The notes under the pieces are model-generated. The model did no database searches. It had not been told where the DNA came from and saw only the letters and a program-made list of their open reading frames with translations. From sequence record NC_041974.1: a DNA stretch of 64,000 nucleotides; one strand, 5' to 3'. Both the position numbers and the translations under genes were made by a program. Each line of letters begins with the position of its first letter. Positions within the stretch are counted from its first letter, which is position 1. Of the stretch, positions 7,879 to 46,274 are shown piece by piece.

Positions 7879-9012
7879 ATGCAGTACAGTACCTTTAATA
7901 CCACTAAAAACGATCAGATGGCTGAACCGATGTTCCTGGGTCAGTCGGTTAACGTCTCACGTTATGATCAGCAGAAGTACCCCGCGTTCGAAAAGCTGAT
8001 TGAGAAACAACTTTCATTCTTCTGGCGCCCTGAAGAGGTGGATGTTTCGCAAGACCGTATCGACTTCCAGGGGTTACCGGATCATGAGAAACACATCTTC
8101 GTGTCTAACCTGAAATACCAAACCCTGCTGGACTCGATTCAGGGTCGTAGTCCGAACGTGGCCCTGCTGCCGATCTGTTCTATCCCGGAACTCGAAACCT
8201 GGATTGAAACCTGGGCGTTCTCTGAAACGATCCACTCGCGCTCATACACCCACATCATCCGTAATATCTTTACTGACCCCTCCATCGTGTTTGATGACAT
8301 CGTGACCAACGAACACATCAAAGCGCGTGCTGAGTCCGTCACGGAGTATTACGACCAGCTGATCGAAATGACCATGTACCTCAACTTACTGGGTGAGGGT
8401 AGCCATGTAATCAATGGTAAGAAAGTCGTGGTGTCGATGCGCGCTATCAAACGTCTGGTCTACCTGTGCATCGTGTCGGTCAACGTGCTGGAAGCCATCC
8501 GCTTCTATGTCTCGTTTGCCTGCTCGTTTGCCTTTGCTGAACGCGAGCTGATGGAAGGTAATGCCAAGATCATTAAACTGATCGCCCGTGATGAAGCCCT
8601 GCATCTGACCGGCACCCAGCACATGATCATGTTGATGAAGTCCGGTGCTGACGATGCTGAGATGGCGGAAATCGTTAAAGAGTGTGAAGCAGAAACATAC
8701 GCACTCTTTAAGGACGCTGCAGAGCAGGAGAAAGACTGGGCGAACTATCTATTCCAGGATGGGTCGATGATCGGTCTGAACAAAGAGATCGTGTGTCAGT
8801 ACATCGAATACATCACCAACATCCGTATTCGCGCCATCGGTTACGATGACATCTACGCCGGTGTCAAAGCTAACCCAATCCCATGGATCAACTCCTGGTT
8901 GGTTTCTGACAACGTGCAAGTCGCTCCACAGGAGTCAGAAATTACCTCCTATTTAGTAGGTCAGATCGATTCAACTGTCGATGCAGATGCGTTTGATAAC
9001 TTCGAACTTTAA
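7879..9012 (+). CDS. nrdB: Ribonucleotide reductase class Ia beta subunit
   Basis: [26 protein letters not shown] (radical Tyr), [16 protein letters not shown] and VQVAPQE; E. coli-like. Confidence 0.98.
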
Positions 9013-9069: not shown

Positions 9070-9903
9070 ATGTCTGTGATAAAAGATAACCCGGATAACT
9101 GGAAAGTGATTCCGGGTTACTCACGTTATGAAATCAATGAAGTCGGCGTTGTAAGAAAGATACATAACAAGAAGGTGATGAAACAATGGCTGCGTGGTAA
9201 TTATACCGCCACTGCTATCACTTCTGATAATAAGTCAACTAGTAGAATAGAATCTATTCATATTTTACTGTGCCTTACATTTATTGGTCCAAAGCCCTTA
9301 CCTGAACCTGGGCACAAACTTGTTACCGCTAACCACAAGGACGGTAACAAACTTAACAATGTGAGGTCTAATGTAGAATGGTTATCCAATTCTGGTAATA
9401 TTCTGCATGCTTACAAGAACCGGCTAAATAAATCATCACAGCACCTGCGTCTAACCAATGTGGTCTCTGGTGAAGTTGTCGACCTACATTCTTACCGCGA
9501 ATTATCCAAATGGATGGGTAATCCTAATCTGCGCGGACGAATGGAGTATCTGAAGTATCGTAACAAGCTTTATCAAGGCCAGTGGCGAATAGAACTTCTT
9601 GGCGAATCAGAGAAGTCTTCAGGGTCTCGTACCAGTAAACAAGTATGCGTAATGGATGTGGCTAAACGACTTGGATTGAGGGAGGGTGAGTTTGATACTT
9701 TCATCTTTAATTCCATGCATGACGCCGCAGCGGCATTAGGCGTAAGTCGCAAAGGTATTGGTCGATCGATCAGTACCAAAGGACGCCATGTTGTAAATGG
9801 GTACGCTATATCGCTATCATTTGACGATATGGCTAATATCACTTATGACAAAGCGTATGTGGAGATTAGTCTTAAATGGGCGAAACTCAGGGGTCAGAAG
9901 TAA
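9070..9903 (+). mobile_element. Free-standing HNH homing endonuclease gene (NUMOD4-HNH-NUMOD1-like)
   Basis: WKVIPGYSRYEINEVG; HILLCLTF..NHKDGNKLNN..NVEW; FNSMHDAAAALGVS; AT-richer than neighbours. Confidence 0.88.
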
Positions 9904-9971
9904 GTTCTTATCTGGTCGGTCAGATCGACTCGAAAGTGGACGCCAACGATTTCGACGATTTCCAACTGTAA
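9888..9971 (+). pseudogene. Displaced second copy of the nrdB 3' end (27 codons)
   Basis: Reads [27 protein letters not shown]-stop versus [27 protein letters not shown]-stop at 8929..9012; both 84 nt. Confidence 0.9.
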
Positions 9972-19066: not shown

Positions 19067-19237
19067 TAATTAAATACTAGACAGTGTAATCATATACGTA
19101 AAGGGGTCTGGTGAAAGCCATATCCCTTTTGGTTATGCTGTCTTTTTTTTTTTGGTTAAGAAATACTAGCCTTCTCCATTATATGCAATTTACACGATAC
19201 ACTTTTCTATTTATTACATCAGCAAGAGAGATAAGAC

Positions 19238-19381
19238 ATGAGCGCACCTGAAGAATTTGATATGGACGGCCTGGAATCACTGGATCTGGAAGGCGCTGAG
19301 AAAGCGGCAGAAGAGAAAGCAGCCGGCGGTGGCGAAGCCCTGTCTGATGGCGAAGCAGATTGCGAAGGCTGCAAGATCTAA
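19238..19381 (+). CDS. 47-aa acidic peptide resembling the NrdA C-terminal redox tail (not in ORF track)
   Basis: MSAPEEFDMDGLESLDLEGAEKAAEEKAAGGGEALSDGEADCEGCKI-stop; GAGAG RBS; codon usage like neighbouring genes. Confidence 0.75.
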   Translation: MSAPEEFDMDGLESLDLEGAEKAAEEKAAGGGEALSDGEADCEGCKI

Positions 19382-19811: not shown

Positions 19812-20423
19812 ATGTTTAAACGTTTCATGTTCTATCTGTTCAGTAAGTTATTTGACCATAAAGGGGAGTACACCATGTCCGAAGCAGTGAAAGATCAGCA
19901 AAGTAATGATGTTAATGCAACCAACGATGTTGAGGTGCAGCCAACACCTGCTGAGACCTCTGCACCGGAACTGGCATCTAACGATGTGGTTGCCGCACCT
20001 GAAGCCGCAGGCGATGCCCGTCCTGAAGTCCAGGACACGGTAGAGTCGACGCCAGTGGTGATTGAACCGGTTGCAGTTGTTGAACCATCCGCACCTGTCG
20101 TGGCACCTGCCCCTGTTGTTGTACCTGCGGCTGAGCCAGCTCCCGCACCTGTAGCACCGACCACCCCGACCGACAGCGATAAGACTGAAGGCGAACCCGA
20201 TACCAATCGCTTCGACCATCTGGCCAGCACCTTGAAGAGTTTACTTCAGGTAGCCGGTCATGAGCTCGACGAAGCATTTGACGATGCAGTACCTTTGGCA
20301 AAACAGATCGCTTCCAGTGACGAAGAGTTCGGTGACAAGCTGAAAGACATCCTTGTGGTTGTCGGTCGTGAATACGGCGAAGCTTTCCATCATTTCTTCA
20401 GCTATGCGAAGAAGCACATCTAA
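19812..20423 (+). CDS. Pro/Ala/Val-rich acidic protein; alternative start at 19875
   Basis: GAGGTG RBS for 19812 and GGGGAG RBS for 19875. Confidence 0.8.
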   Translation: MFKRFMFYLFSKLFDHKGEYTMSEAVKDQQSNDVNATNDVEVQPTPAETSAPELASNDVVAAPEAAGDARPEVQDTVESTPVVIEPVAVVEPSAPVVAPAPVVVPAAEPAPAPVAPTTPTDSDKTEGEPDTNRFDHLASTLKSLLQVAGHELDEAFDDAVPLAKQIASSDEEFGDKLKDILVVVGREYGEAFHHFFSYAKKHI

Positions 20424-46200: not shown

Positions 46201-46274
46201 TGAACACCCGTTTTGGTAATTTATTACGTAGTTGATCAATTATAAGAGAGATATTGTTTATTCGAGGGTGTTTC

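What the first reader, a model, noticed from the sequence alone, without database searches (positions are those of the whole stretch)
19238..19381. Free-standing gene for an NrdA-like C-terminal redox tail (47 aa, ends CEGCKI)
Seen: an uncalled ORF with its own RBS, downstream of a terminator region, encodes an acidic Gly/Ala-rich, probably disordered linker ending D-C-E-G-C-K-I-stop. No nrdA lies next to it. Known: class Ia NrdA ends in an acidic flexible tail with a terminal Cys pair (E. coli ..GCESGACKI, T4 ..DDCAACKL) that carries electrons from thioredoxin or glutaredoxin to the active site. This phage has a class Ia nrdB at 7879. Inference: the tail may have been split off as a diffusible thiol shuttle that works in trans on a tail-less phage NrdA or on host NrdA, or it acts as a thioredoxin/glutaredoxin decoy. 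An ATTTATTAC element at 19209-19217, also found before rnhA (46219-46227), hints at replication-phase expression.
Basis: partly seen in the sequence, partly recalled or inferred. Interest (0 to 1): 0.85.

Follow-up and report, generated by a model that had tools for sequence, protein, structure and literature searches.

The report
Free-standing ribonucleotide reductase tail peptide
A real 47-residue phage gene belongs to a widespread, unnamed family of tiny acidic proteins in Erwinia-like bacteria and their phages. They end in the same two-cysteine tail as the large subunit of ribonucleotide reductase, so they may plug into the electron supply for making DNA building blocks.

Summary
The ORF at 19238-19381 is real. 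It is already annotated as gp111 (hypothetical protein) of Erwinia jumbo phage vB_EamM_Simmy50 and is under purifying selection (dN/dS 0.18-0.44).

Its end, D-C-E-G-C-K-I-stop, is identical to the end of a genuine class Ia NrdA (Pantoea phage Phynn). It differs from the NrdA end found in four Erwinia species (C-E-S-G-A-C-K-I) only by two missing residues.

gp111 is not a piece split from a phage NrdA:
- Simmy50 has a host-like nrdB (76% identical to E. coli NrdB) but no nrdA at all.
- gp111 belongs to a large unnamed family (phrog_10239, no Pfam or NCBIfam model).
- The family includes a 43-residue chromosomal protein found widely in Erwinia amylovora assemblies, and also in Pantoea, Serratia and Pragia.
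- It also occurs in lambdoid, T7-like, N4-like, Dibbivirus, Zobellviridae and three jumbo phage groups.
- The tail also sits on longer proteins. Some of these carry the exact enterobacterial Cx4C NrdA tail.

Best reading: a portable NrdA-tail module that meets the partners of the NrdA tail (the NrdA active site, thioredoxin or glutaredoxin). In phage it most likely supports host NrdA working with phage NrdB. The function is inferred, not shown. The ATTTATTAC promoter hint is not supported.

The parts
19238..19381 (+). gp111 coding sequence (47 aa plus stop), a member of the small-protein family phrog_10239
   Evidence: ORF and translation. Annotated CDS. dN/dS 0.18-0.44. PHROG match E = 9e-30 over the full length. 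Homologues.
19358..19378 (+). C-terminal tail D41-C42-E43-G44-C45-K46-I47, the NrdA-type cysteine pair
   Evidence: 102 of 120 listed homologues end in these seven residues. They are identical to the end of Pantoea phage Phynn NrdA. The enterobacterial NrdA end C-E-S-G-A-C-K-I is close. After the family's own members, the next 16 hits of the tail profile among 6705 ORFs are all NrdA.
19250..19291 (+). N-terminal acidic motif (residues 5-18) with conserved Phe7, Leu12, Leu15, Asp16
   Evidence: These columns are invariant in alignment A1. An acidic-Phe-acidic pattern is kept in bacterial and distant phage members. Its partner is unknown. It does not resemble the NrdB tail by profile search.
19286..19324 (+). 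Predicted short helix (residues 17-29) linking the two motifs
   Evidence: AlphaFold2 model built on alignment A3: helix 17-29, mean pLDDT 67.6, the rest without regular structure.
19226..19230 (+). GAGAG, a Shine-Dalgarno-like stretch 7 nt before the ATG
   Evidence: Read from the sequence. An AGAGA-type stretch is kept in AH06, L092 and L093.
19091..19152 (+). Conserved hairpin followed by a T-run. It is probably the terminator of the upstream gene gp110, so gp111 would start a new transcript.
   Evidence: Fold -19.6 kcal/mol, z -2.83. Nearly identical in Simmy50, AH06, L092 and L093. Not called by the simple scanner.
19176..19185 (+). Locally conserved block CCATTATATG between the hairpin and the gene; a possible promoter element, unproven
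   Evidence: Conserved in four related contigs. It is not repeated elsewhere in the window: 2 matches at up to 1 mismatch against 3.4 expected.
7879..9012 (+). Phage nrdB (class Ia small subunit), the only RNR gene of this phage and the likely working partner of host NrdA
   Evidence: Pfam Ribonuc_red_sm, E = 1e-52. 76% identical to E. coli NrdB, including the C-terminal stretch that binds NrdA. No nrdA anywhere in the genome.

Best explanation
gp111 is a free-standing copy of the C-terminal redox tail of the class Ia ribonucleotide reductase large subunit (NrdA). The tail is mounted on a short acidic helix-and-linker.

**Shown**
- The gene is real and under selection.
- Its last seven residues equal a genuine NrdA end.
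- The family carries both spacings of the cysteine pair (CxxC and Cx4C) that NrdA tails also show.
- The tail is portable, because it is found on unrelated N-terminal parts.
- The phage has nrdB but no nrdA.

**Inferred**
- Because the tail is the conserved part, it should be recognised by whatever recognises the NrdA tail. That means the NrdA active-site cleft, and thioredoxin or glutaredoxin, which re-reduce the tail.
- The mechanism I commit to is a diffusible second tail. Host thioredoxin or glutaredoxin reduces the peptide. The reduced peptide then reduces the active-site disulfide of host NrdA while NrdA's own oxidised tail is away being recharged.
- This would raise deoxyribonucleotide output of host NrdA paired with phage NrdB.

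The direction (support rather than inhibition) is the weakest step. It rests on the argument that phages depending on host NrdA would not keep an inhibitor.
For: **Tail identity and parallel variation**
- Identity with NrdA ends.
- 106 of 120 listed family members end C-x-x-C-K-I and 4 end C-x4-C-K-I.
- Longer members end D-D-C-E-S-G-A-C-K-I or E-C-E-G-G-A-C-K-I, which are exact enterobacterial NrdA-type ends.
- A natural NrdA with C-x-x-C-K-I exists in Photobacterium (L083).
- An orthologue in a contig syntenic with Simmy50 has switched to Cx4C.

**Specificity**
- After the family's own members, NrdA fills the next 9 ranks (whole profile) and the next 16 ranks (tail profile) among 6705 ORFs.

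**Modularity**
- The tail is fused to a Phage_gp49_66 domain in phiEaP8 and to other N-terminal parts.

**No fixed neighbour gene**
- Bacterial contexts differ in Erwinia, Serratia and Pragia. This fits a stand-alone protein acting on universal host parts.

**Genomic company in jumbo phages**
- Simmy50: MazG upstream and thymidine kinase downstream.
- Wellington: thymidylate synthase and MazG.
- L097: thymidylate synthase.
- pEa_SNUABM_5: CMP deaminase.

**RNR setting and precedent**
- The phage has nrdB only, with the NrdA-binding end kept.
- Background from papers: the tail cysteines shuttle electrons from thioredoxin or glutaredoxin to the active site (PMC11903788).
- A second reductant acting while the tail is away raises RNR activity in vitro (PMC4078304).
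Against: - No experiment of any kind bears on this family. No paper holds the tail strings.
- Sequence likeness to NrdA is confined to about 8-11 residues. Profile E-values against NrdA are only 0.1-4, and no full-length NrdA reaches E <= 0.001 in the 1.84-billion-protein search.
- In Erwinia the resident NrdA uses Cx4C while the small protein uses CxxC, so it is not an exact copy of the host tail.
- A tethered tail has a large local-concentration advantage over a free peptide.
- Members occur in a T7-like phage. From general knowledge, such phages mostly salvage host DNA, so RNR support is less obviously useful there.
- No similarity to the conserved nrdA upstream blocks was found upstream of the bacterial copies.
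- The conserved N-terminal motif has no identified partner.
Confidence: 0.4

Rival explanations
1. The same tail mimic works the other way, as a competitor. It occupies the NrdA active-site entrance, or soaks up thioredoxin or glutaredoxin, and so lowers or re-times RNR activity or diverts reducing power. This resembles in outline how yeast Sml1 blocks regeneration of the large subunit.
For: - The tail identity and modularity are the same as for the main explanation.
- Small disordered RNR inhibitors exist in yeast. Sml1 is described as competing at the R1 catalytic site (PMC6382339 citing Zhang et al. 2007). Hug1 is described in the abstract of PMC4245953.
- The family is a chromosomal gene in many bacteria, where a brake on dNTP synthesis makes sense.
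- It is present in a T7-like phage, which by general knowledge has little need of RNR.
Against: - Phages that seem to rely wholly on host NrdA carry it: Simmy50, which has nrdB but no nrdA, and a lambdoid phage contig with no RNR gene in the fetched part.
- In jumbo phages it sits among genes that raise dNTP supply.
- No sequence relation to Sml1 or Hug1 was returned by any search.
Confidence: 0.22
2. The tail is a docking tag for a partner other than RNR chemistry. For example, it could recruit thioredoxin or glutaredoxin, or another host protein that reads this C-terminal motif, to whatever the tail is attached to. In that case the short free form acts as a decoy, possibly in host takeover or counter-defence.
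For: - The tail is appended to several unrelated N-terminal parts, as expected of a portable short linear motif: Phage_gp49_66 in phiEaP8, at least three unknown domains, and a Cys-rich extension in KKP 3828.
- It lies in accessory slots. One is between the lysis genes and terminase of a lambdoid phage. Another is two genes downstream of an AcrVA2-like gene in L109.
- It is very acidic.
Against: - It does not explain why the tail tracks NrdA tail variants so exactly, including the CxxC/Cx4C alternation.
- A chromosomal copy found widely in Erwinia amylovora assemblies (P0113, 323 contigs) argues against a purely anti-host role.
- No match to PADLOC was sought, and no defence link was seen in the window.
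Confidence: 0.18
3. The two cysteines bind a metal (for example two peptides sharing one Zn, Fe or Cu), or the peptide is a precursor that is chemically modified. The likeness to NrdA would then be convergence on a short motif.
For: - A terminal CxxC is a common metal ligand pair (general knowledge).
- The central helix could pair two chains.
- Likeness to NrdA is short and statistically weak by E-value.
Against: - 116 of 120 short members have exactly two Cys.
- There is no conserved neighbouring enzyme gene in three bacterial genera or in the phages, which speaks against a modified-peptide pathway.
- The non-cysteine residues E, G, K, I and the position at the very end are conserved just as in NrdA. 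Metal binding does not require this.
- The Cx4C variants copy NrdA residue for residue.
Confidence: 0.1
4. The ORF is a decaying remnant of the 3' end of a lost phage nrdA gene, or it is not translated at all.
For: - The phage lacks nrdA.
- Elsewhere in the window a 27-residue relic of an nrdB 3' end does exist. Such relics therefore occur in this genome.
Against: - Purifying selection in the annotated frame.
- It has its own start, an SD-like stretch and a conserved upstream region.
- The N-terminal two thirds have no likeness to NrdA, yet they are conserved across bacteria and six or more phage groups.
- The gene lies 10 kb from nrdB.
Confidence: 0.03

Closest known systems
C-terminal redox tail of class Ia ribonucleotide reductase large subunit NrdA (Enterobacterales; Pantoea phage Phynn)
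   Same: Both have a cysteine pair at the very C-terminus followed by K-I-stop, preceded by acidic residues and a flexible stretch. The seven-residue end is identical to Phynn NrdA. Longer family members share the eight-residue end of enterobacterial NrdA. Both show the CxxC and Cx4C spacings.
   Different: It is not attached to an NrdA catalytic body. It is a 47-residue protein of its own, in a genome without nrdA. It has a conserved N-terminal motif that NrdA lacks. In Erwinia the small protein uses CxxC while the NrdA of the four Erwinia species fetched uses Cx4C.
PHROG family phrog_10239 (unknown function)
   Same: gp111 matches over its full length with E = 9e-30. The bacterial and distant phage members also match.
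   Different: The PHROG entry carries no function and no link to RNR. The bacterial chromosomal members and the longer fusion proteins were found here.
Yeast Sml1, Hug1 and fission-yeast Spd1: small disordered regulators of RNR
   Same: They are small, largely disordered proteins that act on RNR subunits. Sml1 is reported to interfere with regeneration of the large subunit, which normally needs its C-terminal CX2C (PMC6382339; PMC4245953).
   Different: No sequence relation was found by any search. Those proteins are eukaryotic inhibitors and do not themselves carry the tail's cysteine pair (from memory, not tested here). Whether gp111 inhibits or supports RNR is unknown.
Glutaredoxin domain fused to NrdB in Facklamia ignava
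   Same: It is another case where a part of the RNR electron-supply chain has been rearranged at the gene level (PMC6187632).
   Different: That case is a fusion of a reductant to the small subunit. Here a tail-like module stands alone or is fused to non-RNR proteins.
Thioredoxin, glutaredoxin and NrdH redoxins
   Same: They use a CxxC dithiol that cycles with RNR.
   Different: gp111 has no thioredoxin fold. It has 47 residues and one predicted helix, with no Pfam match. It looks like the substrate of these proteins, not like one of them.

Membership tests
NrdA C-terminal redox tail (class Ia RNR) | Cysteine pair within the last ten residues, spacing CxxC or Cx4C, followed by two residues and the stop | tested here: met
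   gp111 ends C-E-G-C-K-I-stop. NrdA ends are C-E-S-G-A-C-K-I, C-T-S-C-K-I (L083) and D-C-E-G-C-K-I (Phynn).
NrdA C-terminal redox tail (class Ia RNR) | Acidic, flexible stretch before the cysteines | tested here: met
   15 Asp+Glu in 47 residues. No regular structure after residue 29 and pLDDT about 60.
NrdA C-terminal redox tail (class Ia RNR) | Part of a polypeptide with the RNR catalytic barrel | tested here: not met
   47-residue stand-alone ORF. No NrdA in the whole phage genome. It is therefore not an NrdA, only tail-like.
NrdA C-terminal redox tail (class Ia RNR) | Reduced by thioredoxin or glutaredoxin, and reduces the active-site disulfide | not testable with these tools
   This needs structural, redox-state or biochemical data. 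None exists in the searched literature.
phrog_10239 | Full-length match to the family profile | tested here: met
   E = 9.3e-30, residues 1-47 on profile positions 1-47.
Sml1/Hug1-type small RNR regulators | Sequence relation to those families | tested here: not met
   No Pfam hit at E <= 10. No solved-structure sequence hit of relevance.
Sml1/Hug1-type small RNR regulators | Direct binding to an RNR subunit | not testable with these tools
Ribosomally made, modified peptide precursor | Conserved adjacent gene for a modifying enzyme | tested here: not met
   Neighbours differ completely in Erwinia, Serratia, Pragia, the lambdoid contig, AAM37, Wellington and Simmy50.
Thioredoxin-fold redoxins | CxxC inside a thioredoxin fold of about 80-110 residues | tested here: not met
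   47 residues, one helix, no Pfam match.

The most novel reading that the evidence does not exclude
Enterobacterales and many of their phages encode a so far unrecognised accessory factor of class Ia ribonucleotide reductase. It is a free or portable copy of the NrdA redox tail. It would work in trans as a diffusible electron shuttle or as a regulator between thioredoxin/glutaredoxin and the NrdA active site. Phages would use it to tune host dNTP synthesis, in Simmy50 together with a phage NrdB that pairs with host NrdA.
Probability: 0.35. Interest if true: 0.85.

Novelty: new variant of a known kind. Interest (0 to 1): 0.74.

Why it matters
RNR is the only de novo route to DNA building blocks. 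Its electron supply through the NrdA tail has been studied for decades as a strictly built-in feature of the enzyme.

A separately encoded tail would add a new layer to RNR biology in bacteria. This one is conserved in bacterial chromosomes and picked up by at least eight phage lineages. It would also give a concrete handle on how phages that lack their own large subunit exploit the host enzyme.

It would assign a testable role to a family of more than 100 'hypothetical' small proteins that has no Pfam or NCBIfam model. It is also an example of a short C-terminal motif moving between an enzyme and free-standing genes.

Even if the partner turns out not to be RNR, a seven-residue C-terminal tag kept nearly unchanged on unrelated proteins calls for an explanation.

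Tried and rejected
1. **Split phage NrdA.** Rejected. There is no NrdA in the Simmy50 genome by tblastn or by annotation.
2. **N-terminal motif as a copy of the NrdB C-terminal NrdA-binding peptide.** This was suggested by eye. A profile of the N-terminal part does not rank NrdB among its top hits, so I dropped it.
3. **Longer homology with the NrdA tail upstream of the cysteines** (the D-G-A-E-D stretch). It is not kept in distant family members and is treated as chance.
4. **ATTTATTAC as a promoter.** Not above chance and not conserved. The locally conserved CCATTATATG block is not repeated in the window either.
5. **Shared regulation with nrdA.** The upstream regions of three bacterial copies show no similarity to the conserved blocks upstream of 80 nrdA genes.
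6. **Solved-structure sequence searches** with the peptide and with the family profile gave nothing relevant.
7. **Pfam and NCBIfam** gave no model.
8. **N-terminal domains of the longer fusion proteins** have no Pfam or PHROG match. The AlphaFold2 model was too poor (pLDDT 51) to search with, so no fold search was run.
9. **E. coli genomes** gave no DNA match to the lambdoid-phage copy.
10. **Literature.** No paper holds the tail strings or describes such a protein.
11. **Not done.** I did not take a full RNR gene inventory of pEa_SNUABM_5, Wellington and Y3, and I did not scan PADLOC.

Full report
**Where the window comes from.** The window is bases 62001-126000 of Erwinia phage vB_EamM_Simmy50 (NC_041974.1, 271 kb, Agricanvirus). 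The match is 100%, and record position equals window position plus 62000. The phage carries PhuZ tubulin, a nuclear shell protein and split multi-subunit RNA polymerases, so it is a nucleus-forming jumbo phage.

**The observation.**
- The ORF at 19238-19381 (+) exists and encodes 47 residues ending D-C-E-G-C-K-I-stop.
- It is not uncalled. The record annotates it as gp111, hypothetical protein YP_009605895.1.
- It has 15 acidic and 3 basic residues and two cysteines.
- AlphaFold2, run on a 42-sequence alignment, gives one helix (residues 17-29) and unstructured, low-confidence ends.
- GAGAG lies 7 nt before the ATG.
- The 171-nt spacer after gp110 holds a hairpin and a T-run. A CCATTATATG block follows. 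Both are nearly identical in four related contigs.

**Is it a gene?** Yes.
- All 17 matching records (Simmy50, the other Agricanvirus phages and AH06) encode it.
- Against orthologues from AH06 and two metagenomic contigs, dN/dS is 0.18-0.44. Changes at the three codon positions number 16, 16 and 37.
- The family profile finds 187 proteins at E <= 10 in the 5.8-billion-protein collection. It finds 52 clusters at E <= 0.001 among 1.84 billion representatives.
- PHROGs lists the family as phrog_10239, function unknown.
- Pfam and NCBIfam have no model.

- I reached E. coli nrdAB through the phage nrdB. E. coli NrdA ends G-C-E-S-G-A-C-K-I.
- Among 80 nrdAB loci of Enterobacterales and Vibrionaceae, 57 NrdA end Q-D-D-G-C-E-S-G-A-C-K-I. 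These include four Erwinia species.
- Providencia and Xenorhabdus NrdA end D-C-E-G-G-A-C-K-I. One Photobacterium NrdA ends D-D-C-T-S-C-K-I, a natural CxxC form.
- The T4-like Pantoea phage Phynn has a genuine NrdA ending D-S-D-C-E-G-C-K-I, identical to gp111 over the last seven residues.
- Within the small-protein family, 106 of 120 listed members end C-x-x-C-K-I and 4 end C-x4-C-K-I.
- One Cx4C member lies in a contig syntenic with Simmy50.
- Longer members end D-D-C-E-S-G-A-C-K-I or E-C-E-G-G-A-C-K-I, which are enterobacterial NrdA ends residue for residue.
- I searched 6705 ORFs from all fetched loci with the family profile. After the family's own members, the next 9 hits (whole profile) and the next 16 hits (tail part) are all NrdA. 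Their E-values are only 0.1-4 because the shared stretch is short.

- Simmy50 has no large subunit at all. tblastn of E. coli NrdA against the complete genome gives nothing better than E = 1.4, and none is annotated.
- The phage does have an nrdB that is 76% identical to E. coli NrdB, with the C-terminal NrdA-binding stretch conserved. The natural inference is that phage NrdB works with host NrdA.
- The peptide is not a private invention of this phage. A 43-residue homologue is a chromosomal gene in Erwinia amylovora, seen on 323 contigs including full-length chromosomes. It is also in Pantoea, Serratia, Rouxiella, Pragia, Leminorella, Budvicia, Mixta and others.
- The NrdA fetched from Erwinia, Pantoea and Serratia species keeps its own tail.
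- The chromosomal neighbours differ between genera and are never RNR genes:
  - Erwinia: the gene lies between a DUF808 membrane protein and a DUF2158 protein.
  - Serratia: it lies after ylaC.
  - Pragia: it lies between an acetyltransferase and dcuB.

**Spread in phages.** Members occur in the following lineages.

| Phage or contig | Lineage | Member |
|---|---|---|
| Simmy50 and relatives | Agricanvirus | 47 aa |
| pEa_SNUABM_5 | Rivsvirus | 208 aa, very acidic, same last 19 residues but one |
| Wellington, Kwan, pEa_SNUABM_11 | Wellingtonvirus for Wellington; the other two are Erwinia jumbo phages with the same tblastn hit | 75 aa in Wellington; not read in the other two |
| Y3 | Erwinia jumbo phage | 51 aa |
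| Metagenomic contig L096 | lambdoid | 41 aa, in the slot between Rz/Rha and the nuclease/terminase genes |
| Salmonella phage KKP 3828 | T7-like | 94 aa |
| Pantoea phage AAM37 | Dibbivirus | 41 aa |
| Erwinia phage Pecta | Zobellviridae | 72 aa |
| phiEaP8 | N4-like | tail follows a Phage_gp49_66 domain |

- Thirteen further clusters of 127-296 residues carry the module at their C-terminus, behind at least three unrelated unknown domains.
- The tail is therefore a portable C-terminal module.
- In jumbo phages the gene keeps company with dNTP-metabolism genes:
  - Simmy50: MazG and thymidine kinase.
  - Wellington: thymidylate synthase and MazG.
  - L097: thymidylate synthase.
  - pEa_SNUABM_5: CMP deaminase.

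**How it most likely works.**
- Established background comes from papers. [quoted passage not shown]
- In vitro, a second reductant that acts on the active site while the oxidised tail is away raises activity (PMC4078304).
- In this family the conserved, portable part is the tail, and it follows NrdA tail variants. The partner is therefore most likely what reads the NrdA tail.
- I commit to a diffusible second tail that is charged by host redoxins and discharges into host NrdA. This would support dNDP production by host NrdA plus phage NrdB (confidence 0.4).
- The opposite sign is the main rival (0.22). That would be a Sml1-like blocker or a redoxin sponge (PMC6382339).
- A docking tag for another partner (0.18) and a metal site or modified peptide (0.1) are not excluded.
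- A gene relic or untranslated ORF is contradicted by selection and by the conserved non-NrdA part.

**What was tested and failed.**
- The N-terminal motif does not resemble the NrdB tail by profile search.
- The bacterial copies share no upstream similarity with nrdA.
- No solved structure, Pfam or NCBIfam relative was found.
- The fusion-domain model was too poor for a fold search.
- Literature searches found no description of such a protein.
- The Agrican357virus paper reports NrdB by mass spectrometry, but nothing on this gene (PMC6690015).

**Novelty.**
- The gene family is catalogued but has no function.
- The idea of a separately encoded NrdA tail, present in host chromosomes and many phages and also used as a portable tag, was not found in the searchable literature.
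- I rate it a new variant of a known kind, the known kind being the RNR tail module. If the trans-acting role is shown, it would be a new accessory factor of RNR.

Noticed in passing
window 9888-9971 (+), just after the HNH homing endonuclease gene at 9070-9903: A second, orphan copy of the NrdB C-terminal end lies downstream of the intact nrdB (7879-9012) and overlaps the end of the endonuclease gene. It is 27 residues plus a stop, 67% identical to E. coli NrdB residues 350-376. It looks like a relic left by endonuclease-driven replacement of the nrdB 3' end.
   Followed up: partly
window 7879-9012 compared with other Agricanvirus records: Neighbouring DNA in this genus is about 95-98% identical. 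Even so, the NrdB proteins of MadMel, Deimos-Minion, Desertfox and Rebecca are only 77.5-78.3% identical to Simmy50 NrdB. The genus paper reports a reversed order of the HNH endonuclease and RNR genes in three of these phages (PMC6690015). This suggests allele swapping at this locus.
   Followed up: partly
whole Simmy50 genome (L001, L004-L009): The phage carries nrdB without any nrdA. Several other jumbo phages (Kc263, AH04, OBP, pEt-SU, D6, PCH45, N1M2) and the phiEcoM-GJ1 group have an NrdB 71-76% identical to the Simmy50 NrdB. They do not appear among the 60 best NrdA matches listed. nrdB-only phages may be common.
   Followed up: partly
   Followed up: no
window 19812-20423 (+), gp113: This is a 203-residue protein with a long Pro/Ala/Val-rich low-complexity middle section, two genes downstream of gp111. 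It has no Pfam match, and its PHROG is of unknown function.
   Followed up: no
L109 2112-3389 and 4656-5351: A 231-residue family member ends in the exact enterobacterial Cx4C NrdA tail. It lies two genes downstream of an AcrVA2-like (anti-CRISPR-like) gene in a 51-kb phage contig.
   Followed up: no
proteins P0053, P0069, P0070, P0072: Some metagenomic gene calls run on past ...C-K-I with a Trp and unrelated residues. This may be a stop read through by the gene caller rather than real extensions. P0095 also runs on, but without the Trp.
   Followed up: no
L098 5055-6132 (Erwinia amylovora chromosome): The bacterial 43-residue gene starts 35 nt after the stop of a DUF808 (YedI-type, PRK10062) membrane protein gene on the same strand, so the two may be co-transcribed. 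This linkage is not kept in Serratia or Pragia.
   Followed up: partly
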